A DNA stretch of 63,809 nucleotides, filler included, from Guillardia theta CCMP2712 (GCF_000315625.1; 5 parts of 5 records of this genome joined end to end with filler, not necessarily neighbours in it), one strand, 5' to 3'; positions 25,607-45,690 are shown, counted from the first letter of the whole stretch. A program made the numbers and translations. The notes: generated by a model not told the origin, from the letters alone.

Positions 25607-26413
25607 GTGATTGCATCCTAATCTACTCCTTCGCACTTCCTTCACGCCCTTCACTTCCCCCGAACATTTCTTGTCTTGCGCCTTGCAATATTCGTGCCCA
25701 AGGTAGACAGCAGAGTGCAGGAGAGTTTCTCAATCTCATTGGTTTCATCATATGAAATAAATGAATTGCTCACTTTGCTCATAAACACATTCTTCATACT
25801 CTCCCATGGTCCTAGATAACTGCAACCAACTGCTGATACCGTAACAGCTAGTTAGGGGCATCTCCCTCCTTCAGCCATCAGATCCTGCCGATCCTACCAT
25901 CGGTACTTCAACGAATCTACTTTCTCCCTGCGCTCTCTCCTTCCCTCCATCCTGTCTTTCCTCCCAACTCCGCCATTCCTCTAGGTAAACCTACGTCATC
26001 ACATATAACCACACCTACAATAGCTTTTCCTTCACAAATCTTGATATTCACTCCTCTGCAATATCCTGCTCTCACTCTGCATGTATCTCTATCTCATCCT
26101 CCTCTCCTCCTCTCATCTTCTCTTCCTCTCCTCCTCCTCCTCTCCCTCCTGCTGTACTACGCCACGGCCGCCATCGGGGGAATCAAAGCAGCGCGTGCTT
26201 TTTTTTAATCACCCTACCCTCGATGAACCCGAGATACACAATGAAAAGTGGGGTGGGGGTGGGCTGTTCCAAGTCCCCAAAAAGGAAAAAAGAGCATAAA
26301 TTGTGTAAAANNNNNNNNNNNNNNNNNNNNNNNNNNNNNNNNNNNNNNNNNNNNTTAATTAATTAANNNNNNNNNNNNNNNNNNNNNNNNNNNNNNNNNN
26401 NNNNNNNNNNTGA

Positions 26414-27372
26414 ATGCAGCAAGCTAGCTTATCCTCCTGGGACGCAGCTCACAACCATGGCGACATTCAAGTCCCAGGCCAGACCAGGGCAGCAGCTCCG
26501 CCCACGAGCTTGCTCGGGCTACGAGTCCAGCACCAAGTGCGAAAAGTCCTCAGGCAAGGAAGTCGCACAGGACAGCAGCGACGCGTCCATCTCCAAGGGC
26601 TCGGGCCCGACGGCTCGCTGGAGGGCTCGAGCAGCCCGACGTCAAGCTTCCCGTCCAAGTCGAAGACGTCGTCGGACGCGGACCGGTCGGAGCAGCACGG
26701 CTCGCAGGAGCAGCCGCCGGGGGCGTCCATGAGGGATCTGCAGGAGGCGCTGGGGCAGAAGGGGGGGGGAGGGGGCAGCAGCGAGGACAGGAAGTCGAGC
26801 GACAGCGAGGAGCCCAAGGACCCTTTCTCCGACTCGGGGTCGAGCGCGAGCTGTCCGTCGGCGTCCTCGGCGGGGGAGAAGAGCAGAGCGCTGGAGCAGC
26901 AGGAGGATGAAGATGAGGGGAGGGATGCGATGTCAGATGAGACAGAAGACACGTGGCCTGGGGAGAGGAAGCACGGACGCGAGAGCACGTCCAAGACGTC
27001 CAGCGGGGGGGAAGTCAGGGCGGTGATTGACCGCCGAACAGCAGGGGAGATAGCATCGCTGCTGCACCAGATGATGGAGCAGCAGGAGCAGATCATGGCG
27101 CAGCAGCGGCAGATCCTAGAGAGGGGTATCCAGCCCGGAGTGGAAGGAATGATTGGAGCGGTGCTCATGACTTTTTGCGAGCTGATTGCCAAGATGGAGG
27201 CATGGGGCGAAGGGCTGGAGTTGGTGGAGGAAGCAGAAGCAGAAGCAGGCTGATTGCCAAGATGGAGGCATGGGGCGAAGGGCTGGAGTTGGTGGAGGAA
27301 GCAGAAGCAGAAGCCAAAGCTCACGGAAAGGGACGTGACCGCAGGGCGATGGCAGCAATGGTGTCGCGATGA
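26414..27372 (+). CDS. HTH-family type A copy, 5'-truncated by a gap, with a 68-bp duplication causing a premature stop at 27253
   Basis: Matches the C-terminal half of 30192-31500; the segment at 27181 is repeated at 27249. Confidence 0.55.
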
Positions 27373-27496
27373 AGTGAGCTTGAAGCCAGTGAAGTAGTTT
27401 GCGATGAAACGTGAGCAATCAGCCTCGCGGCATGATTGAATAGGTTGAAGAGCCTGAAGCACGTGCTGTACATTTCATTCATCTCACAGACAGGCC

Positions 27497-28735
27497 CTAG
27501 TGTTTCGGTTGAGAGCTGTTGATCATACCCGCAAGCATCGACGAGATTTGAGCATGCAAGCGTTGCAGCAGCAGGTACTCCTGGTTGCTTCCTCCTGTGA
27601 CGTTGCCCTGCTGCCAAAACAACGGAGGACTTACCACCACCCCTCCTGTCGCCTGCCACCCCTGATGCCCTGCCTGCCCTCCGACCTCCGTACCCTGCCA
27701 CTGGGCAGTGGGAGCACTGCTGCTCCCCTGCCCCCCTCCTCCATACCTCTGTACACAAGCCTGCGCCCCTCCAAAAGATGCCTCAACACCCCCTCCCTGC
27801 CCCGGCGACCTCGACTGGTATCCCCCAAGCCCTCGGACATCCACCCCCTGAAGCCACTGCAACCCCTGCCTCCAAGCCTCTCTCTCGGACTTGAGCTGAC
27901 CAGCTGCGCTCAAGCCTGCCCAGCTCGCTCCNNNNNNNNNNNNNNNNNNNNNNNNNNNNNNNNNNNNNNNNNNNNNNNNNNNNNNNNNNNNNNNNNNNNN
28001 NNNNNNNNNNNNNNNNNNNNNNNNNNNNNNNNNNNNNNNNNNNNNNGACAGGTGCTGAGCGCGTATCTCCAAGATCTGCTTCTGCTGCGCAATGATCTGC
28101 CCCTGCTGCTCTGTCATATGTCGCAGCAGCCCCGCTATCTCTCCTGCCGTCTGACTGTCGATACCCTCCCCCCCTTGCGACTTCTTGAACGTGCTCTCGC
28201 GCCTGTGCTTCCTCTCTCCCGGCTGGGGCTCTGCCTCGGGCTGCGTGCCCTCCCTCCACTTGGACACTGGCTTCCCGCCTCCCTTGCCTCCCTGCTGCTG
28301 CGTTTCCCCGGCACCCGACGAGTGCAGCGCTTCTCCTGCCCGTGCATGCCTCCCCGCCTCCCCTCCTGCCCCTCCTCGCTCGCCGTGCTGCTCCAGCGCT
28401 CTGCTCTTCTCCCCCGCCGAGGACGCCGACGGACAGCTCGCACTCGACCCCGAGTCGGAGAAAGGGTCCTTGGGCTCCTCGCTGTCGCTCGACTTCCTGT
28501 CCTCGCTGCTGCCCCCTCCCCCCCCCTTCTGCCCCAGCGCCTCCTGCAGATCCCTCATGGACGCCCTCGGCGGCTGCCCCTGCGAGCCGTGGTGCTCCGA
28601 CCGGCCCGCGTCCGACGACGTCGTCGACTTGGACGGGAAGCTTGACGTCGGGCTGCTCGAGCCCTCCAGCGAGCCGTCGGGCCCGGAGCCCTTGGAGATG
28701 GACGCGTCGCTGCTCTCCTCTGGCGACTCCTTGCC
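27497..28735 (-). CDS. HTH-family type B copy (start lies in a gap)
   Basis: Shares the Ser-rich core and the TAGEIAGLLRHMTEQQ coiled coil; ends LAGMINSSQPKH. Confidence 0.6.
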   Translation of the reverse strand, partial: GKESPEESSDASISKGSGPDGSLEGSSSPTSSFPSKSTTSSDAGRSEHHGSQGQPPRASMRDLQEALGQKGGGGGSSEDRKSSDSEEPKDPFSDSGSSASCPSASSAGEKSRALEQHGERGGAGGEAGRHARAGEALHSSGAGETQQQGGKGGGKPVSKWREGTQPEAEPQPGERKHRRESTFKKSQGGEGIDSQTAGEIAGLLRHMTEQQGQIIAQQKQILEIRAQHLXXXXXXXXXXXXXXXXXXXXXXXXXXXXXXXXXXXXXXXGASWAGLSAAGQLKSEREAWRQGLQWLQGVDVRGLGGYQSRSPGQGGGVEASFGGAQACVQRYGGGGQGSSSAPTAQWQGTEVGGQAGHQGWQATGGVVVSPPLFWQQGNVTGGSNQEYLLLQRLHAQISSMLAGMINSSQPKH

Positions 28736-29391
28736 NNNNNNNNNNNNNNNNNNNNNNNNNNNNNNNNNNNNNNNNNNNNNNNNNNNNNNNNNNNNNNNNN
28801 NNNNNNNNNNNNNNNNNNNNNNNNNNNNNNNNNNNNNNNNNNNNNNNNNNNNNNNNNNNNNNNNNNNNNNNNNNNNNNNNNNNNNNNNNNNNNNNNNNNN
28901 NNNNNNNNNNNNNNNNNNNNNNNNNNNNNNNNNNNNNNNNNNNNNNNNNNNNNNNNNNNNNNNNNNNNNNNNNNNNNNNNNNNNNNNNNNNNNNNNNNNN
29001 NNNNNNNNNNNNNNNNNNNNNNNNNNNNNNNNNNNNNNNNNNNNNNNNNNNNNNNNNNNNNNNNNNNNNNNNNNNNNNNNNNNNNNNNNNNNNNNNNNNN
29101 NNNNNNNNNNNNNNNNNNNNNNNNNNNNNNNNNNNNNNNNNNNNNNNNNNNNNNNNNNNNNNNNNNNNNNNNNNNNNNNNNNNNNNNNNNNNNNNNNNNN
29201 NNNNNNNNNNNNNNNNNNNNNNNNNNNNNNNNNNNNNNNNNNNNNNNNNNNNNNNNNNNNNNNNNNNNNNNNNNNNNNNNNNNNNNNNNNNNNNNNNNNN
29301 NNNNNNNNNNNNNNNNNNNNNNNNNNNNNNNNNNNNNNNNNNNNNNNNNNNNNNNNNNNNNNNNNNNNNNNNNNNNNNNNNNNNNNNNNNN

Positions 29392-29920
29392 GGGGATAGT
29401 GCAGCGAGCATAGAGGCTCAGTTGTAGAATGAGAGAGGTGTAGGGGTACAGAAACTAGAAGAGTAGGGATATGATATAGAGGATCGAGAGAGATTTTTGA
29501 AAAGGAGAGGTTTTGATAAGTTCAACAAGAGTTTTAGCTCTCCTATAAATTACCCCGGCGTGAATCGATGACAAATAGCGTCATTAAGCTCGAGGGTACT
29601 GGCCGTGAGAAGCAGGGGGGTAGGGGGATAGTGCAGCGAGCATAGAGGCTCAGTTGTAGAATGAGAGAGGTGTAGGGGTACAGAAACTAGACGAGTTGGG
29701 ATATGATATAGAGGATCGAGAGAGGGTTTTTGAAAAGGAGAGGTTTTGATAAGTTCAACAAGAGTTTTAGCTCTCCTATAAATTACCCCGGCGTGAACCG
29801 ATCCATAAAAGGGTACTGGCAGCGAGAAGCAGGGGGGTAAGGGGATAGTGCAGCGATCATAGAGGATCAGTTGTAGAATGAGAGAGGGGTAGGGGTACAG
29901 AAACTAGCAGGATGAGGATA
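29392..29920 (+). repeat. ~220-232-bp direct repeats in the divergent spacer (3 copies visible), full units carrying TATAAATTACCCC
   Basis: GGGGATAGTGCAGCGA recurs at 29392, 29624 and 29841. Confidence 0.85.
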
Positions 29921-30191
29921 TAATAATAGGCATTGTCTGGATGACGCTCATGCGATGTCCGAAAGGTCTCTTTTTCGTAACGGCCACCAACACACCCCCC
30001 ACCCCCTCTGGGAGATCCTAAATCTTACCCCTAAGGCTTCTCACGCCTTGTACGGGCAGGGTGCTGGATTGAGTAGGTGGGGTCTTGATCTCAAGCCCTA
30101 TAGCCGGTACCTTGCCCCGTCCGCACCGCATCGAACTACTCCCGCACCAGCTTACGCTGAAGGCAACTCATTCATGCAAGCCGGATAGGGA

Positions 30192-31500
30192 ATGCAGGCG
30201 AACCACTCCGATATGCACACCGACATGCCGACCTCTTCCGAAGAGCATGCGTCGTTACATCCAACACAAGATACACACCTCGGCAATGCTGATCCGCCTG
30301 CGCATGCAGATCAGCAGAGCGACCTCCCCTCGCATGAGACCATCCTCTCCTCGAAGCTCGCGGCCGAGATCTACGCCGAGCGATGCCTCAAGGCTGGGCA
30401 TGCAACCGTCGAGAGCGCCTTCGTTGCCAGCAAGTACGGCACTAGCCCCAAGACCGTACGCTACATCTGGAGCCGCCGGACCTGGGGCTGATGCCACCNN
30501 NNNNNNNNNNNNNNNNNNNNNNNNNNNNNNNNNNNNNNNNNNNNNNNNNNNNNNNNNNNNNNNNNNNNNNNNNNNNNNNNNNNNNNNNNNNNNNNNNNNN
30601 NNNNNNNNNNNNNNNNNNNNNNNNNNNNNNNNNNNNNNNNNNNNNNNNNNNNNNNNNNNNNNNNNNNNNNNNNNNNNNNNNNNNNNNNNNNNNNNNNNNN
30701 NNNNNNNNNNNNNNNNNNNNNNNNNNNNNNNNNNNNNNNNNNNNNNNNNNNNNNNNNNNNNNNNNNNNNNNNNNNNNNNNNNNNNNNNNNNNNNNTCCGG
30801 GCCCGACGGCTCGCTGGAGGGCTCGAGCAGCCCGACGTCAAGCTTCCCGTCCAAGTCGACGACGTCGTCGGACGCGGCCCGGTCGGAGCAGCACGGCTCG
30901 CAGGAGCAGCCGCCGGGGGCGTCCATGAGGGATCTGCAGGAGGCGCTGGGGCAGAAGGGGGGGGGAGGGGGCAGCAGCGAGGACAGGAAGTCGAGCGAGG
31001 GGGGGGAGCCCAAGGACCCTTTCTCCGACTCGGGGTCGAGCGCGAGCTGTCCGTCGGCGTCCTCGGCGGGGGAGAAGAGCAGAGCGCTGGAGCAGCAGGA
31101 GGATGAAGATGAGGGGAGGGATGCGATGTCAGATGAGACAGAAGACACGTGGCCTGGGGAGAGGAAGCACGGACGCGAGAGCACGTCCAAGACGTCCAGC
31201 GGGGGGGAAGTCAGGGCGGTGATTGACCGCCGAACAGCAGGGGAGATAGCATCGCTGCTGCACCAGATGATGGAGCAGCAGGAGCAGATCATGGCGCAGC
31301 AGCGGCAGATCCTAGAGAGGGGTATCCAGCCCGGAGTGGAAGGAATGATTGGAGCGGTGCTCATGACTTTTTGCGAGCTGATTGCCAAGATGGAGGCATG
31401 GGGCGAAGGGCTGGAGTTGGTGGAGGAAGCAGAAGCAGAAGCCAAAGCTCACGGAAAGGGACGCCACCTTGGGGCGATGGCAGCAGTAGTGTCGCAATGA
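30192..31500 (+). CDS. Putative HTH DNA-binding protein, type A (gapped; apparent frameshift at the gap edge)
   Basis: LAAEIYAERCLKAGHATVESAFVASKYGTSPKTVR.IWSRRTW, a Ser-rich linker and a Q-rich coiled coil. Confidence 0.65.
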
Positions 31501-31688
31501 AGGCCTGTATGGACAGCGAACTGAAGAGTTTCTTTTCAAGGACACTACCTTGAACCTCATAGACAGTGGGCTTGAAGGCAGTGAAGTAGTTTGCTATGAA
31601 ACGTGAGCAATCAGCCTCGCGGCATGATTAAATAGGTTGAAGAGCCTGAAGCACGTGCTGTACATTTCATTCATCTCACAGACAGGCC

Positions 31689-33473
31689 CTAGTGTTTCGG
31701 TTGAGAGCTGTTGATCATACCCGCAAGCATCGACAAGATTTGAGCATGCAAGCGTTGCAGCAGCAGGTACTCCTGGTTGCTTCCTCCTGTGACGTTGCTC
31801 TGCTGCCAAAACAACGGAGGACTTACCACCACCCCTCCTGTCGCCTGCCACCCCTGATGCCCTGCCTGCCCTCCGACCTCCGTACCATGCCACTGGGCAG
31901 TGGGAGCACTGCTGCTCCCCTGCCCCCCTCCTCCATACCTCTGTACACAAGCCTGAGCCCCTCCAAAAGATGCCTCAACACCCCCTCCCTGCCCCGGCGA
32001 CCTCGACTGGTATCCCCCAAGCCCTCGGGACATCAACCCCCTGCAGCCCCTGCAGCCCCTGGCTCCAAGCCTCTCTCCCCGCCATGAGCTGACCAGCTGC
32101 GCTCAAGCCTGCCCAGCTCGCTCCCCCGCCTCCTACTACTGCACCTCCCCCGCGAGGCTTCATCCAGCTGGCTCCTCCGCGTGTCCATCCCCAGACAATG
32201 TTGCGTCCTCTGAGCTCCCGACAATGAGCTCCNNNNNNNNNNNNNNNNNNNNNNNNNNNNNNNNNNNNNNNNNNNNNNNNNNNNNNNNNNNNNNNNNNNN
32301 NNNNNNNNNNNNNNNNNNNNNNNNNNNNNNNNNNNNNNNNNNNNNNNNNNNNNNNNNNNNNNNNNNNNNNNNNNNNNNNNNNNNNNNNNNNNNNNNNNNN
32401 NNNNNNNNNNNNNNNNNNNNNNNNNNNNNNNNNNNNNNNNNNNNNNNNNNNNNNNNNNNNNNNNNNNNNNNNNNNNNNNNNNNNNNNNNNNNNNNNNNNN
32501 NNNNNNNNNNNNNNNNNNNNNNNNNNNNNNNNNNNNNNNNNNNNNNNNCCCGGAGCATGCTTCCCCGCCTTCCCCTCCTCTTCCGGTCTCGCTCCCCGTG
32601 CTGCGCAAGCGCTCTGCTCTTCTCCCCCGCCGAGGACGCCGACGGACAGCTCGCGCTCGACCCCGAGTCGGAGAAAGGGTCCTTGGGCTCCTCCCTGTCG
32701 CTGTCGCTCGACTTTCTGTCCTCGCTGCTGCCCCCTCCCCCCGCCTCCTGCCCCAGCGCCTCCTGCAGATCCGTCATGGATGCCCTCGGCGGCTGCCCCT
32801 GCGAGCCGTGGTGCTCCGACCGGCCCGCGTCCGACGACGTCGTCGACTTGGACGGGAAGCTTGACGTCGGGCTGCTCGAGCCCTCCGGCGAGCCGTCGGG
32901 CCCGGAGCCCTTGGAGATGGACGCGTCGCTGCTCTCCTCTGGCGACTCCTTACCCGAGGACTTGTCGCACTTGGTGCTGGCCTCGGAGCCCGAGCACAGC
33001 TCGTGCGCGGAGCTGCTGCCCTGGCTAGCCTGGGACTTGATGTCAGCCATGGAGGGAGCTGCGGCGCCGGAGGACAAGCTGCTGCTGCATCCACCATGGT
33101 CGTCGTCGCGCTTGCGCTTCTTGCTGTCGGGCTGCATGGGATGGTCCTTGCCCTCCTCCTTGGCCGCCATGAGCGACCTCTCCTCCTCGGTCCAGAGAGG
33201 CCTGGTGGCATCGGCCCAGGTCCGGCGGCTCCAGATGTCGCGGACGGTCTTGGGGCTAGTGCCGTACTTGCTGGCAACGAAGGCGCTCTCGACGGTTGCA
33301 TGCCCGGCCTTGAGGCATCGCTCGGCGTAGATCTCGGCCGCGAGCCTTGAGGACAGGGTTCTCTTCTTTGCTTGAGGCGCGTCGGATCGAGCTGACGTTG
33401 CCGACGTTGCCGATGAGGCTGACGAGAGGTCAAGCAGGTGGTTGAACATGGTATGGTGGTTGTGCGAGTTCAT
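31689..33473 (-). CDS. Putative HTH DNA-binding protein, type B (gapped)
   Basis: MNSHNHH N-terminus, the same HTH-like block, KKRKR NLS and Ser-rich region. Confidence 0.65.
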
Positions 33474-34394
33474 CGCTGAGACAAGGAGACGCGATCGTGG
33501 TGGCGCTAGAGAGGAGGAGCGTGCATAGACTGAGGGCTGCTGCGGGGATGCTAGACAAGGAGGATGGAAGAGAACAGATGCATGATGGGGGGTATCTCTT
33601 TGAGGAGATCGCGCTGGAGCAGGGCGGGTGGGGTTATGGGCGGATGCCTTTTTCGTGGGAGGGAGGAGGGCACGGACGGGGAGGGGGTACGGGTGGGGGT
33701 ACTTGATGGAAATCAAGGGGTCCATGAAGCTTGAGGCGACTGGCAGCGAGAAGCAGGGGGGGTAGGGGATAGTGCAGCGAGCATAGAGGCTCAGTTGTAG
33801 AATGAGAGAGGTGTAGGGGTACGGAACCTAGAAGAGTAGGGATATGATATAGAGGATCGAGAGAGATTTTTGAAAAGGAGAGGTTTTGATAAGTTCAACA
33901 AGAGTTTTAGCTCTCCTATAAATTACCCCGGCGTGAACCGATCATAAATAGCGTCATTAAGCTCGAGGCGACTGGCAGCGGGAAGCAGGGGGGTAGGGGG
34001 ATAGTGCAGCGAGCATAGAGGCTCAGTTGTAGAATGAGAGAGGTGTAGGGGTACAGAAGCTATCGAGATGAGGATATAATTTAGAGGATCGAGAATGGAT
34101 ACCTGTCTTTTATAAATTACCCCGTCCGGATGACGTTGATGCGATGTCCGAAAGGACTCTTTTTCGTAAGGGCCAACCAGTACACACCCCACCCCCTCTG
34201 GGAGATCCTAAATCTTACCCCTAAGGCTTCTCACGCCTTGTACGGGCAGGGTGCTGGATTGAGTAGGTGGGGTCTCGATCTCAAGCCCTATAGCCGGTAC
34301 CTTGCCCCGTCCGAACGGAGTACCGCATCGAACTACTCCCGCACCAGCTTACGCTGAAGGCAACTCATTCATGCACCCTAAAGCCGGATAGGGA
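33474..34394. promoter_or_regulatory. Bidirectional spacer between type B and type A genes, with two ~231-bp direct repeats
   Basis: Repeat copies begin at ~33734 and ~33965; TATAAATTACCCC occurs twice. The same spacer recurs at 37780-38582. Confidence 0.6.
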
Positions 34395-35705
34395 ATGCAG
34401 GCGAACCACTCCGATATGCACACCGACATGCCGACCTCTTCCGAAGAGCATGCGTCGTTACATCCACCACAAGATACACACCTCGGCAATGCTGATCCGC
34501 CTGCGCATGAAGATCAGCAGAGCGACCTCCCCTCGCATGAGACCATGCTGTCCGCGAAGCTCGCGGCCGAGATCTACGCCGAGCGATGCCTCAGGCCGGG
34601 GCATGCAACCGTCGAGAGCGCCTTCGTTGCCAGCAAGTACGGCACTAGCCCCAAGACCGTCCGCGACATCTGGAGCCGCCGGACCTGGCCCGATGCCACC
34701 AGGCCTCTCTGGACCGAGGAGGAGAGGTCGCTCATGGCGGGCCAAGGAGGAGGGCAAGGACCATCCCATGCNNNNNNNNNNNNNNNNNNNNNNNNNNNNN
34801 NNNNNNNNNNNNNNNNNNNNNNNNNNNNNNNNNNNNNNNNNNNNNNNNNNNNNNNNNNNNNNNNNNNNNNNNNNNNNNNNNNNNNNNNNNNNNNNNNNNN
34901 NNNNNNNNNNNNNNNNNNNNNNNNNNNNNNNNNNNNNNNNNNNNNNNNNNNNNNNNNNNNNNNNNNNNNNNNNNNNNNNNNNNNNNNNNNNNNNNNNNNN
35001 NNNNNNNNNNNNNNNNNNNNNNNNNNNNNNNNNNNNNNNNNNNNNNNNNNNNNNNNNNNNNNNNNNNNNNNNNNNNNNNNNNNNNNNNNNNNNNNNNNNN
35101 NNNNNNNNNNNNNNNNNNNNNNNNNNNNNNNNNNNNNNNNNNNNNNNNNNNNNNNNNNNNNNNNNNNNNNNNNNNNNNNNNNNNNNNNGAAAGTCGAGCG
35201 ACAGCGAGGAGCCCAAAGAACCCTTTCTCCGACTCGGGGTCGAGCGCGAGCTGTCCGTCGGCGTCCTCGGCGGGAGAAAAAGAGCAGAGCGCTGGAGCAG
35301 CAGGAGGATGAAGAGGAGGGGAGGGATGCGATGTCAGATGAGACAGAAGACACGTGGCCTGGGGAGAGGAAGCACAGGCGCGAGAGCACGTCCAAGACGT
35401 CCAGCAGGGAGAAGGTCAGGGCGGTGATTGACCGCCGAACAGCAGGGGAGATAGCATCGCTGCTGCACCAGATGATGGAGCAGCAGGAGCAGATCATGGC
35501 GCAGCAGCGACAGATCCTAGAGAGGGGTATCCAGCCCGGAGTGGAAGGAATGATTGGAGCGGTGCTCATGACTTTTTGCGAGCTGATTGCCAAGATGGAG
35601 GCATGGGGCGAAGGGCTGGAGTTGGTGGAGGAAGCAGAAGCAGAAGCCAAAGCTCACGGAAAGGGACGCCACCTTGGGGCGATGGCAGCAGTAGTGTCGC
35701 AATGA
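34395..35705 (+). CDS. Putative HTH DNA-binding protein, type A (gapped)
   Basis: Near-identical to 30192-31500. Confidence 0.65.
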   Translation: MQANHSDMHTDMPTSSEEHASLHPPQDTHLGNADPPAHEDQQSDLPSHETMLSAKLAAEIYAERCLRPGHATVESAFVASKYGTSPKTVRDIWSRRTWPDATRPLWTEEERSLMAGQGGGQGPSHXXXXXXXXXXXXXXXXXXXXXXXXXXXXXXXXXXXXXXXXXXXXXXXXXXXXXXXXXXXXXXXXXXXXXXXXXXXXXXXXXXXXXXXXXXXXXXXXXXXXXXXXXXXXXXXXXXXXXXXXXXXXXXXXXXXXXXXXXXXXKVERQRGAQRTLSPTRGRARAVRRRPRREKKSRALEQQEDEEEGRDAMSDETEDTWPGERKHRRESTSKTSSREKVRAVIDRRTAGEIASLLHQMMEQQEQIMAQQRQILERGIQPGVEGMIGAVLMTFCELIAKMEAWGEGLELVEEAEAEAKAHGKGRHLGAMAAVVSQ

Positions 35706-35893
35706 AGGCCTGTATGGACAGCGAACTGAAGAGTTTCTTTTCAAGGACACTACCTTGAACCTCATAGACAGTGGGCTTGAAGGCAGTGAAGTAGTTTGCT
35801 ATGAAACGTGAGCAATCAGCCTCGCGGCATGATTAAATAGGTTGAAGAGCCTGAAGCACGTGCTGTACATTTCATTCATCTCACAGACAGGCC

Positions 35894-37364
35894 CTAGTGT
35901 TTCGGTTGAGAGCTGTTGATCATACCCGCAAGCATCGACAAGATTTGAGCATGCAAGCGTTGCAGCAGCAGGTACTCCTGGTTGCTTCCTCCTGTGACGT
36001 TGCTCTGCTGCCAAAACAACGGAGGACTTACCACCACCCCTCCTGTCGCCTGCCACCCCTGATGCCCTGCCTGCCCTCCGACCTCCGTACCATGCCACTG
36101 GGCAGTGGGAGCACTGCTGCTCCCCTGCCCCCCTCCTCCATACCTCTGTACACAAGCCTGAGCCCCTCCAAAAGATGCCTCAACACCCCCTCCCTGCCCC
36201 GGCGACCTCGACTGGTATCCCCCAAGCCCTCGGACATCAACCCCCTGCAGCCCCTGCAGCCCCTGGCTCCAAGCCTCTCTCCCCGCCATGAGCTGACCAG
36301 CTGCGCTCAAGCCTGCCCAGCTCGCTCCCCCGCCTCCTACTACTGCACCTCCCCCGCAAGCCTCATCCAGCTGCTCCTCCCCGCGTCCATCCCCTGACCA
36401 GCTTGCGTCCTCTGAGCTCCCGACAAGCTCCGTTGCTCCACCGCCGACAGGTGCTGAGCGCGTATCTCCAAGATCTGCTTCTGCTGCGCAATGATCTGCC
36501 CCTGCTGCTCTGTCATATGTCGCAGCAGCCCCGCTATCTCTCCTGCCGTCTGACTGTCGATACCCTCCGCCCCTTGCGACTTCTTGGAGGTGCTCTCGCG
36601 CCTGTGCTTCCTCTCTCCCGGCTGGGGCTCTGTCTCGGGCTGCGTGCCCTCCCTCCACNNNNNNNNNNNNNNNNNNNNNNNNNNNNNNNNNNNNNNNNNN
36701 NNNNNNNNNNNNNNNNNNNNNNNNNNNNNNNNNNNNNNNNNNNNNNNNNNNNNNNNNNNNNNNNNNNNNNNNNNNNNNNNNNNNNNNNNNNNNNNNNNNN
36801 NNNNNNNNNNNNNNNNNNNNNNNNNNNNNNNNNNNNNNNNNNNNNNNNNNNNNNNNNNNNNNNNNNNNNNNNNNNNNNNNNNNNNNNNNNNNNNNNNNNN
36901 NNNNNNNNNNNNNNNNNNNNNNNNNNNNNNNNNNNNNNNNNNNNNNNNNNNNNNNNNNNNNNNNNNNNNNNNNNNNNNNNNNNNNNNNNNNNNNNNNNNN
37001 NNNNNNNNNNNNNNNNNNNNNNNNNNNNNNNNNNNNNNNNNNNNNNNNNNNNNNNNNNNNNNNNNNNNNNNCGGCGAGCCGTCGGGCCCGGAGCCCTTGG
37101 AGATGGACGCGTCGCTGCTCTCCTCTGGCGACTCCTTGCCCGAGGACTTGTCGCACTTGGTGCTGGCCTCGGAGCCCGAGCACAGCTCGTGCGCGGAGCT
37201 GCTGCCCTGGCTGGCCTGGGACTTGATGTCAGCCATGGCGGGAGCTGCGGCGCCGGAGGACAAGCTGCTGCTGCATCCACCATGGTCGTCGTCGCGCTTG
37301 CGCTTCTTGCTGTCGGGCTGCATGGGATGGTCCTTGCCCTCCTCCTTGGCCGCCATGAGCGACC
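35894..37364 (-). CDS. HTH-family type B copy (HTH and start lie in a gap)
   Basis: Near-identical to the other type B copies. Confidence 0.6.
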
Positions 37365-38582
37365 NNNNNNNNNNNNNNNNNNNNNNNNNNNNNNNNNNNN
37401 NNNNNNNNNNNNNNNNNNNNNNNNNNNNNNNNNNNNNNNNNNNNNNNNNNNNNNNNNNNNNNNNNNNNNNNNNNNNNNNNNNNNNNNNNNNNNNNNNNNN
37501 NNNNNNNNNNNNNNNNNNNNNNNNNNNNNNNNNNNNNNNNNNNNNNNNNNNNNNNNNNNNNNNNNNNNNNNNNNNNNNNNNNNNNNNNNNNNNNNNNNNN
37601 NNNNNNNNNNNNNNNNNNNNNNNNNNNNNNNNNNNNNNNNNNNNNNNNNNNNNNNNNNNNNNNNNNNNNNNNNNNNNNNNNNNNNNNNNNNNNNNNNNNN
37701 NNNNNNNNNNNNNNNNNNNNNNNNNNNNNNNNNNNNNNNNNNNNNNNNNNNNNNNNNNNNNNNNNNNNNNNNNNNNNNNATCTCTTTGAGGAGATCGCGC
37801 TGGAGCAGGGCGGGTGGGGTTATGGGCGGATGCCTTTTTCGTGGGAGGGAGGAGGGCACGGACGGGGAGGGGGTACGGGTGGGGGTACTTGATGGAAATC
37901 AAGGGGTCCATGAAGCTTGAGGCGACTGGCAGCGAGAAGCAGGGGGGTAGGGGGATAGTGCAGCGAGCATAGAGGCTCAGTTGTAGAATGAGAGAGGTGT
38001 AGGGGTACAGAACCTAGAAGAGTAGGGATATGATATAGAGGATCGAGAGAGATTTTTGAAAAGGAGAGGTTTTGATAAGTTCAACAAGAGTTTTAGCTCT
38101 CCTATAAATTACCCCGGCGTGAACCGATCATAAATAGCGTCATTTTAAAAGCTCGAGGCGACTGGCAGCGGGAAGCAGGGGGGTAGGGGGATAGTGCAGC
38201 GAGCATAGAGGCTCAGTTGCAGAATGAGAGAGGTGTAGGGGTACAGAAGCTATCGGGATGAGGATATAATTTAGAGGATCGAGAATGGATACCTGTCTTA
38301 TAAATTACCCCGTCCGGATGACGTTGATGCGATGTCCGAAAGGACTCTTTTTCGTAAGGGCCAACCAGTACACACCCCACCCCCTCTGGGAGATCCTAAA
38401 TCTTACCCCTAAGGCTTCTCACGCCTTGTACGGGCAGGGTGCTGGATTGAGTAGGTGGGGTCTCGATCTCAAGCCCTATAGCCGGTACCTTGCCCCGTCC
38501 GAACGGAGTACCGCATCGAACTACTCCCGCACCAGCTTACGCTGAAGGCAACTCATTCATGCACCCTAAAGCCGGATAGGGA

Positions 38583-40591
38583 ATGCAGGCGAACCACTCC
38601 GATATGCACACCGACATGCCGACCTCTTCCGAAGAGCATGCGTCGTTACATCCACCACAAGATACACACCTCGGCAATGCTGATCCGCCTGCGCATGAAG
38701 ATCAGCAGAGCGACCTCCCCTCGCATGAGACCATGCTGTCCGCGAAGCTCGCGGCCGAGATCTACGCCGAGCGATGCCTCAAGGCCGGGCATGCAACCGT
38801 CGAGAGCGCCTTCGTTGCCAGCAAGTACGGCACTAGCCCCAAGACCGTCCGCGACATCTGGAGCCGCCGGACCTGGGCCGATGCCACCAGGCCTCTCTGG
38901 ACCGAGGAGGAGAGGTCGCTCATGGCGGCCAAGGAGGAGGGCAAGGACCATCCCATGCAGCCCGACAGCAAGAAGCGCAAGCGCGACGACGACCACGCTG
39001 GATGCAGCAGCAGCTTGTCCTCCGGCGCCGCAGCTCCCGCCATGGCGGACATCAAGTCCCAGGCCAGCCAGGGCGGCAGCTCCGCGCACGAGCTGTGCTG
39101 GGGCTCCGAGGCCAGCACCAAGTGCGACAAGTCCTCGGGCAAGGAGTCGCCAGAGGAGAGCAGCGACGCGTCCATCTCCAAGGGCTCCGGGCCCGACGGC
39201 TCGCCGGAGGGCTCGAGCAGCCCGACGTCAAGCTTCCCGTCCAAGTCGACGACGTCGTCGGACGCGGGCCGGTCGGAGCAGCACGGCTCGCAGGGGCAGC
39301 CGCCGGGGGCGTCCATGACGGATCTGCAGGAGGCGCTGGGGCAGGATGGGGGGGGAGGGGGCAGCAGCGAGGACAGAAAGTCGAGCGACAGCGAAGAGCC
39401 CAAAGACCCTGGACCCTTTCTCCGANNNNNNNNNNNNNNNNNNNNNNNNNNNNNNNNNNNNNNNNNNNNNNNNNNNNNNNNNNNNNNNNNNNNNNNNNNN
39501 NNNNNNNNNNNNNNNNNNNNNNNNNNNNNNNNNNNNNNNNNNNNNNNNNNNNNNNNNNNNNNNNNNNNNNNNNNNNNNNNNNNNNNNNNNNNNNNNNNNN
39601 NNNNNNNNNNNNNNNNNNNNNNNNNNNNNNNNNNNNNNNNNNNNNNNNNNNNNNNNNNNNNNNNNNNNNNNNNNNNNNNNNNNNNNNNNNNNNNNNNNNN
39701 NNNNNNNNNNNNNNNNNNNNNNNNNNNNNNNNNNNNNNNNNNNGGGTTTGAGGAGGTGGGGAGGCGGCAGCAGCGAGGACAGAAAGTCGAGCGACAGCGA
39801 GGAGCCCAAGGACCCTTTCTCCGACTCGGGGGTCGAGCGCGAGCTGTCCGTCGGCGTCCTCGGCGGGGGAGAAGAGCAGAGCGCTTGCGCAGCACGCTGA
39901 GCGAGCAGGGGCAGGAGGGGAGGCGGGGAAGCATAATTGGATGCCCGAGGCAGAGCCCCAGCCGGGAGAGAGGAAGCACAGGCGCGAGAGCACGTTCAAG
40001 AAGTCGCAAGGGGGGGAGGGTATCGACAGTCAGACGGCAGGGGAGATAGCGGGGCTGCTGCGACATATGACGGAGCAGCAGGAGCAGATCATTGCGCAGC
40101 AGAAGTTAATATTAGAAAGGGGGCTTACGCCAAACATGGATGCTTTGGTTCATAGGGCTTTGAATACTGTTGGGCATTTGAGGGCGGAAATGGAAGCTTG
40201 GAGCCGAGATAAAAATATGAAAGTTCGTGGGCTAACTGGGATGGATATACAAGACCAGTCAGTCAGGTGCGACCCCCCCGCCTTTCACGAATGCAAGGGT
40301 TCACCTTATGTTGGCTGCCGGCCCGAGCAAGTGGCAGGACAGGCACAGCCAGAAACAGAGCGAGCACGGGTGTTTGAAGGTACACAGGGTGACAATCATC
40401 AGGGGCATGGGGAAGAAGGTGTTCGTCAGGAAGTGCATCCAGAGCGGCAGGCGAACTATGGAATCGGGGGATCAGTGCTTGAGCAGGAACAGTCGATAGC
40501 GCCTGGAAGCCTGCAACGTTTATTGCTGCATCTGATACTTTCTCAGATCTCTTCCACATTGCTCGGCTTGAATCGCACAGAACCTTCATGA
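38583..40591 (+). CDS. Putative HTH DNA-binding protein, chimeric/divergent terminal copy
   Basis: Type A N-terminus (MQANHSD), type B-like middle (ESTFKKSQGGEGIDSQTAGEIAGLLRHMTEQQ) and a diverged C-terminus ending LQRLLLHLILSQISSTLLGLNRTEPS. Frame across the gap is unresolved. Confidence 0.6.
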
Positions 40592-41750: not shown

Positions 41751-42954
41751 TCTGTCCTAGGGCTACTCCTAGCAGCTTCTAGGCGAGTACCACCATCCTA
41801 TTTCCATTCTGATAGTGGGTCTTAGTACAGACTATCCCCAGGTAGGGCCACAAATTGTAGATATGGTGGACCCTACCCCCTGTTGAAAATGCATTATATA
41901 AGGAAACACCCCTGGATTGCTCGCTGTATGTCCGCTAGGCTCCGATATAGGGCTCGGCTCCTCCATTGCAACAGATAACCAAATATTGACTAATTAGTGG
42001 GTAAATGCTGTTATCTAATATACAGTCAGATCAAATATAATCGTTTTGTGGCTAATTTAACTATTGGAGTGTTATTTTTAGTTGAGGCCGTACGAGTTTC
42101 GATTCTTTGCGGACCCCCACCCTAAATACAACTGGATCCACCCCTACCCCTAGTCAAGACCATAAAGTACCCTCCTCCCAGGAGCGGTGCCCTACTAGTC
42201 TCCCTTTTTACTGAATGTACCCCTCTCTTGGACCGGCTGCACCCCACTACCCCATCGAAAGAATTGTCTACCCCTACCCCCCTTTGTCGTTGCCATTTAC
42301 CTTTCACCCCCCTTGCTTCCGTCCCTCCTTTGTCTTGCCGCAACCCTGGCACTGTCCTCGTAACAAGCAACCCCCTACTGTTCCCTCCCCGCCTGCCTTG
42401 CTGCATTCGCATGCTCGTGCTCTTTCCCACTCTCTCTCTCCCCCTCCCAGACTCTTTCACCCCCCTCCCTCCTCGTCTCTTGCTCCTTGTGTGTCCACGA
42501 CTCCCCTCCAGTCTTCAGCTGCCTCCTTGCTCGTATTCCCTTAAATGCAAATGGCTGCCTCGCCCTTGGATCTTTTTCATCAGTGTATTTGTTCTGAAAT
42601 TTAACCCCTGACTGTCATCATTATACAACCCATCCCAACCCATCCCAACCCATTTCGTCCTATCCTGTCTGACCCAAACTCGTCACGTCCTGTGCCAAGT
42701 CATTTCACCCCCTCCCATTTCAACCCGTCCAATCTTGCCACGTGGTCTTGTTCCTAGGTCCCAAGACTCACATCCTTTTTTCCATGACAGAAATTTATTT
42801 CTCGGGACCTCCACTGGCATGGCAGTTTCTGCTCAAGGTAATGGTTGAATAACGAAAGATCATCTAAGTATAACGCGGGGTGAAATGAGAGCTGTTACAA
42901 GACCTTTCCTCTTGATCTTTCCAGCATCTTCTGAATTTCTACATCTTGGCAGGA

Positions 42955-45659
42955 GCTGCGATGGAAGCAAAACCTCTTAAATCATACAGAATGCAATCTC
43001 GGTGCATATTTAGGAAGCATCTAACTACCTTAATGGCAACTGCTTGTTCCTTTGGATTTGTTTCCTTCGCGTCGGCCAACACGTTGAAGTAGAGCGTTCA
43101 TCTTTCTTAACAGGCCATTTGCTGAGCATCTTCACAGGCTTGAACGACGGCCGAAGATGTTTTCAGCATCTTCCAACTTCCGCAACTCGTTTGGAAACGC
43201 TGGGATGCAAGATGAGACGAAAGATTCGAGCCAAGCAGTGAGGAAATGCGAACGTGTCTACATACGTTGACATGTTGAAGATGCCGCGCGAACCCGCCGA
43301 GCACATCTTGAAGAATGTAACATCTTGTATGGCACGTTGACGTTGTGTGACCAACATGTCGACTTAACAGAAAACTTCACTCGAACACATCGACAATCTC
43401 GTAACAGCTCTCTTGAAGCTCGAAATGAGTGTGATAGTATTCAGGACCTGCAAGTGGAGCTGAACATCTCCCTTTCCGGTTCCAGAGCGCAAAGTCTTGA
43501 CGACATCATGAAGAAACAGGTAGCAGAGGGAGTTTGCGCAGGCCACTCTGACGTGAAAGGGTTTGAAAGACTCAGGCGTACTTCTTGAGGTCCGATGAAG
43601 AAAACATCGCAACCTCCACAACTAAGACTGCTTCAACCCATCGCTCTCATTTCTCCTCTATTCCTACGCGATTTGAATTTGAAAACAAGGATGTTGACTC
43701 TCTGTGGAAGTACAAGAATGAGCAAGCAGAGGTGCAGAAGCAATCCAAGACCGTAATGGAGACCAAGAAGCTCGCCGCTGTCAAGAACCTTGATCTGCAG
43801 CTTCACAAAATGATGAACTCACGTGGTAAGGTCATGATGAGTGGCATGCGAGCTTAATGGTTTGTCCCTTGGGGCGGTGCTGTGCCAGCATGAACAAGAC
43901 GGTCATCCACTGATATCACTCACATGTATCTTGTAGATCAATTGCTTTCAGATGCTGCAATTGCCAAGGAAGGCACATCTTCCTCTGCAGACGAGAATAA
44001 TTCTCAGCTCGAGCAATCTCTGGTCTTGAAAGAGCAGTTGAAAGCTGCGCTTGAAAGGTCTGGTCTTGATCATGTCCTAGCACCTCCTGAATGGTGGCAT
44101 GCGATGTAGAGTGGAGAAAGCAGAGAAGGAGATTCAGCTGCTGCGGTCGGCGATTGGCATGTGATTGCAGCTGCACGAGACTTTCATAGGGGTGACAGAA
44201 ACGGTGCAGGAGGTCGTGGGTTAAAGAGCCTTCGGAGCAGCCATCCCATCGAGATCAAACTGTAAGTTTTGTTGTCTTGAATCATTAACGGGGCATGCTG
44301 CAATGAAGCTATGCAGTGCGATGAAAATCTGAACCTTGCTTGCATGCTATGAAATTGATGGCAAATGCGTTGCAAAACTTCGGTATTTCTGTTTACATGG
44401 CATGCTTCTTATGAGATCACATATACGAGAAGGTGCGCTAGGGACCTGCTGAAATGACCCGTTTGACCAGGTGATGGCCAACGGAGGCGATAGACGGATC
44501 TCTTCCATGCAGGAGAGCGCAATGACGTACCTGGAGACAAGACTGAGGACATTGTGGAGGACTGCGAACGACAAGCAGAAGGATGCAACCAGCTTGCTGC
44601 AAGCGCAGGGCCCCTCGAGGAAGGAGCTCGTGAACAGCATCATCAGCTTGCAGAAGCGATTCAACAAGTTCAGGTTGCTCCTTGTTTGTCCCTCTCCTCC
44701 GCCCACCTCATCTTCTGCGTCGCTCATGTCTTGCATTGCTCTCACACTCTTCCGTCCTTCCCCCCAGACCCTGAATCGTTGCTGAGCAGGGACACCACGT
44801 CGAACATTCAGGATCCCGAGGCGTCTGAGCAGCAGATCACCAAGGCTCTGAGTGACATGGCCCACCGCCAACATGGGAGGAGGGAGGAAGAGGCGTTTCA
44901 ATCAGGCAGGACGGTCAACGAACAGGAGGAGGCGACCAACGGATTCTTCAGTGGATGGCGGACGAGCTGGAGGTGGAAGAAATTCTTTGGTCACAGGAGG
45001 GAGGAGGCGAGTGGAGGATACAGAGGTGATCACTTCGAGGAGCGAGGGAGTGAAAGAGAATGTCCTGCTCCTCACGCCGATGAAGTTCAGGTTGATCATT
45101 CAAACTCGAGTGAGCAGTATCCTGACGAGTGTCTCTTTCTGCGGGCGTCTTGCCTTTGCGTTGTTCATTCGTTGCGAATCGTTTCTGTGCTTGTTGCCGC
45201 TCCTCGTGGCTCTCTTGTTTCTTTCCTCTCTCTCTCTTTGTCTCTTCCACCTCTCGAAATGCTGCAGTTCGTCCTCATAGAAGAACTTCAACGGTGCAGA
45301 GCGCAAGTCCAGGTGCGAATCTGGCTGATCTTACCACCCTCCAACATTCACAACCAACATCCCATCCACATCAACCGCATCCTTCACAATCTCTTGGCTC
45401 CTCTCCTTCCGCAGTGACCTCCCGCGTGAGCAGGAGGCGAACCTGTGGGCAAGCTTGCTGTCCCATCGTACGCATGTGCTGCATGCTGTTACGGCTGTTT
45501 GCGGCCTCTCACGCTCTTTCAGGGTAGCGTGCAGGACACATGGCAGCTGGGGTCCTGGCAAGGGACGTTTGTGCAAGACTCGGATACTGAGATCGATATG
45601 ACACTCAAGATCCTTGAGATGAAACAGGTTTCCTCCCCTCCTCCTCCTCCTCCTCCTCC

Positions 45660-45690
<31 letters not shown>

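What the first reader, a model, noticed from the sequence alone, without database searches (positions are those of the whole stretch)
26411..40591. Tandem array of divergently paired, paralogous HTH-like transcription factors
Seen: seven gene copies alternate +,-,+,-,+,-,+ with a ~4.2-kb period. Types A and B share a near-identical nucleotide core (HTH-like block VASKYGTSPKTVRDIWSRRTW, KKRKR, Ser-rich region) but differ in N-terminus and in the C-terminal coiled coil and tail. Knowledge: the pattern 'A..YG.S..TV.DI...RTW' fits a helix-turn-helix recognition helix like those at the ends of phage HNH endonucleases and Psq/CENP-B-type domains. Inference: a co-expressed homo/heterodimeric regulator pair driven from one bidirectional promoter, amplified as a cassette and homogenised by gene conversion. 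The layout is loosely analogous to basidiomycete HD1/HD2 pairs, with no homology implied.
Basis: partly seen in the sequence, partly recalled or inferred. Interest (0 to 1): 0.75.

Follow-up and report, generated by a model that had tools for sequence, protein, structure and literature searches.

The report
Tandem array of paired HTH-protein genes
A cryptophyte alga (Guillardia theta) carries a real ~4.2-kb tandem repeat in which each unit holds two head-to-head paralogous genes for probable nuclear DNA-binding proteins, built on a widespread helix-turn-helix domain that no Pfam family covers and kept nearly identical in their middle parts by gene conversion.

Summary
The piece is Guillardia theta CCMP2712 nuclear scaffold JH993075.1. 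It carries seven gene copies in +,-,+,-,+,-,+ order with a 4186-4205 bp period. Every copy is broken by assembly gaps, and the left edge of the array lies in a 2,410-N gap.

A and B types have unrelated N-termini. At the first residue of the conserved block they switch sharply to a ~750-nt core of 96-100% nucleotide identity (HTH block, KKRKR, Ser-rich region). The coil region is 60-80% identical and the tails are unrelated. Core variants do not sort by type, which indicates concerted evolution. A second pair 18 kb away shows the same mosaic.

The 60-aa block folds with confidence (pLDDT 88.5) into a short helical bundle. Its best structural matches, at Z about 5, are HTH DNA-binding domains. 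No Pfam family reaches threshold. A profile of the block finds 3,374 protein clusters, mostly from eukaryote-like metagenome contigs. Some relatives also carry RWP-RK, some repeat the domain in tandem, and one is a GIY-YIG homing endonuclease.

The likeliest reading is a lineage-amplified family of nuclear HTH regulators. Co-expression and heterodimerisation are untested. B2 and B3 need frame changes, so some copies may be decaying or mis-sequenced.

The parts
26411..27253 (+). A1: 3' two-thirds of an A-type gene (Ser-rich core, coil at 27038-27121, short A tail). Its 5' end, including the HTH block, lies in the 2,410-N gap left of the piece.
   Evidence: ORF 26414-27253 is database protein P0003. 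The gap is at L003 7588-9997. Coil position.
27497..28735 (-). B1: 3' part of a B-type gene (Ser-rich core, B-specific insert, coil at 28067-28150, Gly/Gln-rich tail, terminal LLLQRL motif at 27542-27574). It is interrupted by gap 27932-28046, and its 5' part with the HTH block lies in gap 28736-29391.
   Evidence: Frame translations; tblastn of Hanusia phi transcript P0002 residues 68-283 onto 28732-28064; motif positions.
29392..30191 (.). Shared 5' intergenic region of the head-to-head pair B1/A2. It holds overlapping ~232-bp direct repeats, and the motif TATAAATTACCCCG occurs at 29544 and 29777.
   Evidence: blastn self-matches 29392-29711 to 29624-29929; motif search.
30192..31500 (+). 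A2: A-type gene (unique 50-aa N-terminus, HTH block cut at gap 30499-30795, Ser-rich core, coil at 31234-31317, short A tail).
   Evidence: ORFs; tblastn of P0001 and P0004. The gap length of 297 equals the length implied by paralogs.
31689..33725 (-). B2: B-type gene and the most complete B N-terminal half (unique N-terminus, HTH block 33180-33356, KKRKR 33108-33122, Ser-rich core). Gap at 32233-32548. The tail has one extra C relative to B3, and a frame change is needed upstream of the tail.
   Evidence: ORF 32160-33725; motifs; frame analysis.
33726..34394 (.). Shared 669-bp 5' intergenic region of pair B2/A3 (candidate bidirectional promoter). Two ~140-bp direct repeats lie 232 bp apart, each followed by TATAAATTACCCCG (at 33917 and 34111).
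   Evidence: Sequence; repeats; motif found 6 times against 0 expected.
34395..35705 (+). A3: A-type gene (HTH block 34548-34724, gap 34772-35188, coil 35439-35522). It corresponds to annotated GUITHDRAFT_117464.
35894..37911 (-). B3: B-type gene (start at 37911, KKRKR 37294-37308, coil 36466-36549, tail to 35894). Gaps at 36659-37071 and 37365-37779; the second hides the HTH block. The main frame stops at 36340, and the tail continues in another frame.
37912..38582 (.). Shared 671-bp 5' intergenic region of pair B3/A4, 99% identical to 33726-34394.
   Evidence: blastn match 33594-34771 to 37780-38958 at 98.7%; motif at 38103 and 38299.
38583..40591 (+). A4: terminal, chimeric copy (annotated GUITHDRAFT_117466). 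It has an A-type N-terminus, HTH block 38736-38912, KKRKR 38970-38984, the core, a doubtful gap at 39426-39743, a B-like coil at 40034-40117, a long C-terminus, and the terminal motif at 40520-40552 that is shared with B and with the second pair.
   Evidence: C-terminal model.

Best explanation
This is a real, recently amplified tandem array in the nuclear genome of the cryptophyte Guillardia theta. Each ~4.2-kb unit carries two paralogous, apparently intronless genes arranged head-to-head.

Both genes encode the same module order: a variable N-terminus, a ~60-residue three- to four-helix HTH-type domain, a basic KKRKR stretch (a likely nuclear localisation signal), a conserved Ser-rich acidic region, and a ~30-residue heptad-like helix. 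In type B and in the terminal copy A4 there follow a Gly/Gln-rich stretch and a short amphipathic C-terminal helix (LLLxLL).

The most likely function is sequence-specific DNA binding in the nucleus, that is, a lineage-expanded family of transcription regulators that oligomerise through the helix. The short A form lacks the Gly/Gln-rich stretch and the terminal helix. It would then be a partner or modulator of the long B form.

The ~750-nt stretch encoding the HTH block through the Ser-rich region is kept 96-100% identical between A and B by gene conversion, while the ends diverge. Paired proteins therefore share one DNA-binding specificity but differ in their other modules.

Shown here: the array, the mosaic identity pattern, the predicted fold, and the size of the family. 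Inferred only: DNA binding, nuclear location, dimerisation, co-expression from the shared 670-bp intergenic region, and the intactness of individual copies.
For: Origin: Guillardia theta CCMP2712 scaffold JH993075.1.

Array and orientation.

Mosaic: A4 vs B2 identity is ~40% upstream of 38736 and 93-100% from there to ~39400. A2 vs B1 identity is 92-100% up to ~31090, then 42-82% through the coil, then unalignable.

Concerted evolution: in 231 shared core columns A1-B1 differ at 5 sites, A1-A2 at 6, B1-B2 at 6 and A2-B2 at 14, so variants do not sort by type.

Second pair: GUITHDRAFT_117472 and 165776 show the same pattern. Core residues ~55-285 are 98-100% identical in nucleotides with almost no synonymous differences, while the flanks are 37-60% identical.

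Domain fold: AF2 pLDDT 88.5 with helices 4-16, 25-32, 36-43 and 49-55. Foldseek and VIA rows are dominated by HTH DNA-binding domains.

Family size: the profile search finds 3,374 clusters at E<=1e-3 and 1,186 at E<=1e-10.

Contexts fitting DNA binding: a separate RWP-RK domain in P0071 and P0119 (E ~1e-12), tandem domain repeats in P0008, and the GIY-YIG homing endonuclease P0090.

Transcription and conservation: the module order is conserved in Hanusia phi transcripts P0002 and P0005.

C-terminal model: helix 30-61 at pLDDT ~90 and terminal helix 190-211 at ~76.
Against: - No curated family threshold is met by the window proteins.
- Structural Z-scores of 4-5.5 lie within the range the tool describes as common for small helical models.
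- There is no expression data for the array copies themselves.
- B2 and B3 need frame changes between the coil region and the tail. B2 has a 1-nt insertion relative to an otherwise identical B3 tail.
- Among copy-specific differences, nonsynonymous changes are at least as frequent as synonymous ones (1 vs 6, 4 vs 8, 3 vs 9). This gives no sign of purifying selection on the youngest duplicates.
- Every copy is gapped, so no complete A or B ORF is actually read.
Confidence: 0.6

Rival explanations
1. The array is mostly a young, neutrally decaying duplication. One or a few copies, or only the intact paralogs GUITHDRAFT_117472 and 165776 outside the window, are functional, and the rest are pseudogenes. 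The A/B pairing would then have no functional meaning.
For: B2 and B3 need frame changes, and B2 has a 1-nt insertion in a tail otherwise identical to B3. Differences between copies are mainly nonsynonymous. A1 carries a perfect 68-bp tandem duplication that alters its 3' end. The annotators produced only partial gene models.
Against: The frame problems sit in G/C-rich runs inside a repeat that the assembler could not close, so consensus errors are equally likely. The long ORFs are otherwise open. The core stays 96-100% identical. The module order is conserved in transcripts of a sister genus.
Confidence: 0.25
2. Assembly artefact: a single unit, or two alleles, was over-assembled into several tandem copies.
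For: There are eight gaps in 14 kb. B2 and B3 tails differ at 0 of 435 positions. One gap has overlapping flanks. The left boundary is hidden in a 2,410-N gap.
Against: The copies carry distinct substitutions: B1 vs B2/B3 13 of 435, A2 vs A3 10 of 429, A2 vs A4 17 of 307. Unit 1 is ~180 bp longer. A4 has a unique C-terminus and runs into unique flanking DNA. Seven gap sizes taken from paired ends agree with the paralog-implied lengths.
Confidence: 0.08
3. A selfish or mobile-element-derived cassette: the HTH would be the DNA-binding arm of a transposase or homing endonuclease, and the repeat unit would be a mobile or virus-derived element rather than host regulators.
For: Relatives of the domain match the HTH modules of phage HNH and GIY-YIG endonucleases and transposase HTH families (ISL3, IstA, Tc3). 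Four matches occur in viral contigs, one of them a giant-virus MAG.
Against: The unit has no nuclease or transposase domain, and the two genes plus two spacers fill its 4.2 kb. DNA left of the array has no similarity to it. Only 4 viral loci were found against 34 metagenome loci and thousands of clusters. The neighbours are ordinary host genes.
Confidence: 0.05

Closest known systems
HTH DNA-binding modules of phage and giant-virus homing endonucleases (PHROG 59 'HNH endonuclease', PHROG 6156 'endonuclease', GIY-YIG proteins with repeated HTH)
   Same: The sequence pattern is shared: helix 1 'LT.E.A..I', then '..LA..(F/Y)GVS..T(V/I)..I', then a conserved W shortly after the recognition helix. 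Relatives of the window domain hit these PHROGs (E 2e-5 to 2.6e-10). The domain profile finds the GIY-YIG protein P0090 at E 6e-16.
   Different: The Guillardia proteins have no nuclease domain. Their own domain does not reach significance against these PHROGs. The extended RDIW..RTW...T.PLW signature is specific to the eukaryotic family. The context here is an NLS, a Ser-rich region and a coil.
Pfam HTH clan families HTH_28, CENP-B_N (Psq type), HTH_23 and HTH_Tnp_ISL3
   Same: Short three-helix HTH. Sub-threshold sequence hits fall on the helix 2-turn-helix 3 part. Structural matches include CENP-B, Tc3 and IstA HTH domains.
   Different: All hits for the window proteins fall below the gathering scores (13.2 against 25 bits). 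The family has its own conserved Trp-rich extension after helix 3. No Pfam model covers it.
RWP-RK transcription factors (NIN-like proteins, MID/minus-dominance)
   Same: An algal or plant HTH-like DNA-binding domain with a Trp after the recognition helix. Some members of the present family also carry a true RWP-RK domain downstream (P0071, P0119).
   Different: It is a separate domain. The window proteins lack the RWPxRK motif and give no RWP-RK hit.
Basidiomycete HD1/HD2 mating-type gene pairs (from general knowledge)
   Same: Two divergently transcribed genes for DNA-binding proteins, proposed to work as a pair.
   Different: There is no homeodomain homology. Here the two partners share an almost identical DNA-binding core instead of two different homeodomain classes. 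The pair is amplified in tandem. Heterodimerisation is untested.
Macrosatellite arrays that encode a transcription factor in every unit, such as D4Z4/DUX4 (from general knowledge)
   Same: Kilobase-scale tandem units each carry an intronless ORF for an HTH-type DNA-binding protein, and the copies are homogenised by concerted evolution.
   Different: Each unit here holds two inverted paralogs. The domain is unrelated to homeobox, the copy number seen is small, and the organism is a cryptophyte.

Membership tests
Tri-helical HTH DNA-binding fold | Compact bundle with helix 2-turn-helix 3 (the recognition helix) packed on helix 1 | tested here: met
   AF2 on an 18-sequence alignment gives pLDDT 88.5 and pTM 0.75, with helices 4-16, 25-32, 36-43 and 49-55.
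Tri-helical HTH DNA-binding fold | Structural similarity to solved HTH domains clearly above background | tested here: inconclusive
   Best Foldseek E is 1.2. VIA Z is 4.4-5.5 to IstA, Reb1, DeoR, Tc3 and CENP-B, but also to an Atg complex chain. The tool states that Z under 8 may reflect only a common arrangement.
Pfam HTH_28 (PF13518) | Score at or above the gathering cutoff of 25 bits | tested here: not met
   13.2 bits (E 0.1) for A4 and 11.6 bits for B2.
Pfam CENP-B_N / Psq-type HTH (PF04218) | Score at or above the gathering cutoff of 21.2 bits on the window protein | tested here: not met
   No hit at E<=1 for the window proteins. Only relatives give weak hits (P0008 22.9 bits with no stretch passing, P0010 15.3 bits).
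Homing-endonuclease HTH module (PHROG 59 / 6156) | Significant profile match of the DNA-binding module | tested here: inconclusive
   The window domain hits only phrog_4151 'DNA binding protein' at E 0.032. Relatives L020, L004 and P0008 hit phrog_59 and phrog_6156 at E 2e-5 to 2.6e-10. The link is transitive, through profile A2.
Homing endonuclease (HNH or GIY-YIG) | Presence of a nuclease catalytic domain | tested here: not met
   No HNH or GIY-YIG hit in any A or B piece, nor in P0035 or P0183.
RWP-RK transcription factors (PF02042) | RWPxRK motif and a Pfam match | tested here: not met
   No Pfam hit.
HD1/HD2 homeodomain pair | Homeodomains of two classes in divergently transcribed genes | tested here: not met
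   The divergent layout is present, but there is no Homeodomain Pfam hit. Homeodomain structures appear only among weak Foldseek rows with E>1.
Coiled-coil dimerisation segment | Long amphipathic helix with heptad spacing that pairs with a partner | tested here: inconclusive
   The monomer AF2 model gives helix 30-61 at pLDDT ~90. Read by eye, hydrophobic residues recur at 3-4 spacing with Gln at some core positions. No multimer prediction was available.

The most novel reading that the evidence does not exclude
The RDIW..RTW block defines a large eukaryotic (mainly algal) family of DNA-binding domains that no Pfam family covers and that descends from the HTH arms of homing endonucleases. In Guillardia its members form a macrosatellite-like array of divergent A/B pairs. 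Recurrent gene conversion confined to the DNA-binding and Ser-rich core keeps one binding specificity, while the dimerisation and effector ends diversify. This would be a system of obligate long-form/short-form heterodimeric regulators, possibly tied to life-stage or mating identity in cryptophytes.
Probability: 0.12. Interest if true: 0.75.

Novelty: new variant of a known kind. Interest (0 to 1): 0.45.

Why it matters
Cryptophyte gene regulation is almost unstudied, and these genes are annotated only as hypothetical proteins. The work shows three things.

First, the conserved block belongs to a very large family (3,374 clusters at 50% identity) that no Pfam model covers. It deserves its own domain definition and a binding-site determination.

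Second, the family links eukaryotic putative regulators with the DNA-binding arms of homing endonucleases.

Third, in two independent paralog pairs gene conversion is confined to the same HTH-to-Ser-rich segment. This is a clean natural case of segmental concerted evolution that fixes DNA-binding specificity while the partner and effector modules diverge.

It also flags a locus in the reference assembly that needs long reads.

Tried and rejected
- Word-indexed protein searches restricted to the domain found only 15 and 10 candidates, all Guillardia or Hanusia. The exhaustive profile search was needed.
- Sequence search of PDB chains gave nothing significant, with a single protein or with the profile (best AsnC at E 0.21).
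- tblastn of the domain against 50,697 phage records found no match.
- The ESM Atlas gave only unnamed clusters and weak HTH leads.
- A literature search for the motif strings and locus tags found nothing relevant.
- Rfam found no RNA family in the piece.
- TRF found no short-period array that explains the unit.
- The sigma-70 promoter scan does not apply to a eukaryote and found nothing.
- A transposon reading was rejected because there is no transposase or nuclease and the unit has no room for one.
- An intron as the explanation of the B frame change was rejected. The alignment to the intact paralog P0183 and to Hanusia P0002 is collinear and leaves no room for an intron.
The annotators' spliced model P0001, which jumps gap 39426-39743, was used only as the database returned it. 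ORFs read through N-runs were not used as evidence.


Full report
**Origin.** The piece 26411-47839 is nuclear DNA of the cryptophyte Guillardia theta CCMP2712, scaffold JH993075.1 (231,663 bp). Database proteins GUITHDRAFT_117466 (P0001) and GUITHDRAFT_117464 (P0004) and an unnamed ORF (P0003) map onto it. The piece begins directly after a 2,410-N gap. The DNA to the left of that gap has no similarity to the array. The left boundary and the true copy number are therefore unknown.

**Observation.**
- Direct-repeat families recur at 4186-4205 bp (4373 bp for the first unit). Inverted repeats of up to 659 nt are 93-98% complementary.
- ORFs and tblastn with relatives give seven copies in +,-,+,-,+,-,+ order:
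  - A1 26411-27253
  - B1 27497-28735+
  - A2 30192-31500
  - B2 31689-33725
  - A3 34395-35705
  - B3 35894-37911
  - A4 38583-40591
- B and the following A are head-to-head across 669-671 bp. A and the following B are tail-to-tail across 188 bp.
- The quoted peptide strings are present.

**Gaps, tested first as requested.**
- There are eight N-runs inside the array.
- For seven of them the flanks map collinearly onto a gap-free paralog, and the implied missing length is close to the N-run:

| Gap | N-run (nt) | Length implied by paralogs (nt) |
|---|---|---|
| 27932-28046 | 115 | 117 |
| 28736-29391 | 656 | 810 |
| 30499-30795 | 297 | 297 |
| 32233-32548 | 316 | 298 |
| 34772-35188 | 417 | 416-423 |
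| 36659-37071 | 413 | 407 |
| 37365-37779 | 415 | 415 |

- The lengths do not preserve frame. ORFs that run through N are not evidence, and I used only gap-free pieces.
- The flanks of gap 39426-39743 overlap each other by ~87 bp at 93.5% identity. This is probably an unresolved join rather than missing sequence.
- All gaps fall in or next to the part shared by A and B. That is where an assembler would fail.

**Anatomy of the genes.** Alignment of gap-free pieces with two intact single-exon paralogs and two transcripts gives one module order. The paralogs are P0035 (GUITHDRAFT_117472) and P0183 (GUITHDRAFT_165776), on the same scaffold. The transcripts are P0002 and P0005 from Hanusia phi, which belongs to the same family, Geminigeraceae. 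The modules are:
1. a variable N-terminus;
2. the ~60-aa conserved block;
3. a basic KKRKR or KRRK stretch;
4. a conserved Ser-rich acidic region;
5. a helix of the form TAGEIA.LL..M.EQQ.QI.AQQ..ILE;
6. in B, A4, P0035 and P0183 only, a Gly/Gln-rich stretch and a terminal LLLxLL-type motif.

A1-A3 end soon after the helix with their own short tail. A4 is a chimera with an A N-terminus, a B-like helix and a long C-terminus.

**Mosaic identity.**
- A4 and B2 are ~40% identical in nucleotides upstream of 38736. That position is the first residue of the conserved block. From there they are 93-100% identical for about 690 nt.
- A2 and B1 stay 92-100% identical to ~31090 (...EKSRALEQ). They then fall to 42-82% through the helix and become unalignable.
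- In the shared core the variants do not sort by type. A1-B1 differ at 5 sites, A1-A2 at 6, B1-B2 at 6 and A2-B2 at 14, over 231 columns. This is the signature of concerted evolution between the inverted paralogs.
- The second pair shows the same mosaic. P0035 and P0183 lie in tandem, 1.1 kb apart, 18 kb to the right, beyond three unrelated genes.
  - Core residues ~55-285 are 98-100% identical in nucleotides, with almost no synonymous differences.
  - The flanks are 37-60% identical.
- The absence of synonymous differences argues for conversion rather than purifying selection. Confinement to the same segment in two independent pairs is the most unusual feature of the locus.

**The conserved block.**
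- Pfam gives only HTH_28 at 13.2 bits against a cutoff of 25. PDB sequence searches are not significant.
- A metagenome scan returned 34 loci that encode the block.
- An 18-sequence alignment of the block (A2) was used as a profile against 1.84 billion cluster representatives. It found 3,374 proteins at E<=1e-3 and 1,186 at E<=1e-10.
- The named hits are 'hypothetical protein'. Those carrying an organism name or transcriptome tag are Guillardia, Hanusia or MMETSP transcripts (MMETSP is a marine-protist transcriptome set). The rest come from metagenome contigs that look eukaryotic.
- Another Guillardia member, GUITHDRAFT_121120, lies on a different scaffold.
- Only four matches occur in viral contigs.
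- Architectures among relatives fit DNA binding:
  - two or three tandem copies of the domain (P0008 and others);
  - the domain followed by a true RWP-RK domain (P0071 and P0119, E ~1e-12);
  - a GIY-YIG homing endonuclease with repeated HTH modules (P0090).
- Relatives hit PHROG 59 'HNH endonuclease' and PHROG 6156 'endonuclease' in their DNA-binding parts (E 2e-5 to 2.6e-10). The window domain itself reaches only E 0.032 against a phage 'DNA binding protein' family, and tblastn finds no phage match.

**Fold.**
- AlphaFold2 on alignment A2 gives pLDDT 88.5, with helices 4-16, 25-32, 36-43 and 49-55.
- Foldseek rows (E>1) are almost all HTH proteins: AsnC, sigma region 4, homeodomains and GerE.
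- The wide VIA search gives Z 4.4-5.5 to the IstA transposase HTH, Reb1, DeoR, Tc3, CENP-B, Myb and Lrp. One unrelated chain ranks first, and the tool warns that such Z values are common for small helical models.
- The fold is consistent with an HTH. Significance is not established.
- The C-terminal model of A4 has a confident helix at 30-61 (pLDDT ~90). A second helix spans 64-98, residues 99-186 are disordered, and a terminal helix spans 190-211.

**Integrity and selection.**
- In B3 the main frame stops at 36340, while the conserved tail continues in another frame.
- In B2 the change lies further upstream. B2 also has one extra C in a tail that is otherwise identical to B3 (0 substitutions in 435 nt).
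- The alignment to intact relatives is collinear, so an intron does not explain the frame change.
- These may be consensus errors in G/C-rich runs of an unresolved repeat, or they may be real lesions.
- Differences among copies are mostly nonsynonymous (1 vs 6, 4 vs 8 and 3 vs 9 synonymous vs nonsynonymous codons). The youngest duplicates show no detectable purifying selection.
- The family as a whole is conserved across genera.

**Shared spacer.**
- Each head-to-head spacer carries ~140-bp direct repeats 232 bp apart (overlapping ~232-bp repeats in unit 1).
- TATAAATTACCCCG occurs twice per spacer, always in the A direction. That is six matches against none expected, but they are copies of one repeat and not independent.
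- Bidirectional promoter function is plausible and untested.

**Verdict.**
The HTH-like fold, the cassette amplification and the gene conversion are supported. Co-expression and heterodimerisation are open.
- The best reading, with confidence about 0.6, is a lineage-amplified family of nuclear HTH regulators with segmental concerted evolution.
- It is a new variant of a known kind: an HTH domain family that no Pfam model covers, in an unusual paired tandem layout.
- Constraints:
  - no contig looked human;

Noticed in passing
window 27181-27314: A perfect 68-bp tandem duplication (2.0 copies, 100% match) sits at the 3' end of A1. It changes the C-terminus relative to A2 and A3. It could be real or an assembly stutter.
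   Followed up: partly
window 39426-39743: The 318-N gap in A4 has flanks that overlap each other by ~87 bp at 93.5% identity. It is probably a false gap. The annotators' model GUITHDRAFT_117466 bridges it with an intron.
   Followed up: yes
window 32557-33528 (+), equal to L002 3975-4946: The public annotation has a 225-aa gene model on the + strand, antisense to B2. Homology to the conserved domain and to Hanusia transcripts supports the - strand, so the + model is probably spurious (a long antisense ORF in GC-rich DNA).
   Followed up: partly
scaffold JH993075.1 133743-137859 (L038 10001-14117), outside the window: Two intact single-exon paralogs, GUITHDRAFT_117472 (475 aa) and GUITHDRAFT_165776 (517 aa), lie in tandem 18 kb right of the array. 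They show the same core-only nucleotide identity (98-100%) with diverged ends.
   Followed up: yes
window 45631-45735, 46099-46153, 47078-47199: TCC/CCT trinucleotide and 9- and 21-nt repeats give poly-Ser, poly-Pro, poly-His, poly-Met and poly-Arg runs in several frames inside a 742-aa annotated gene (about window 42819-47605). The ORFs tested there have no Pfam match.
   Followed up: partly
P0026 (metagenome ORF, 1,282 aa, 36-kb contig): It matches the recognition-helix part of the profile 19 times (...KRYTSPTTVQQIWS...) within a ~59-aa repeat that recurs along nearly the whole ORF. It looks like a DNA tandem repeat derived from a fragment of such a gene and read as protein.
   Followed up: no
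L044 3001-3180 (IMG/VR GVMAG-M-3300021379-1, 39.9-kb contig): One giant-virus MAG contig encodes a relative of the domain (35% identity over residues 2-61). It could be a viral copy or a eukaryotic contig binned as viral.
   Followed up: no
L040 15523-18244 (ENA contig_16610, 64.8 kb): A metagenome contig that carries a two-domain family member also encodes proteins with weak EsV-1-7 cysteine-rich motif hits. This hints that some relatives come from stramenopile-like algae or their viruses.
   Followed up: no
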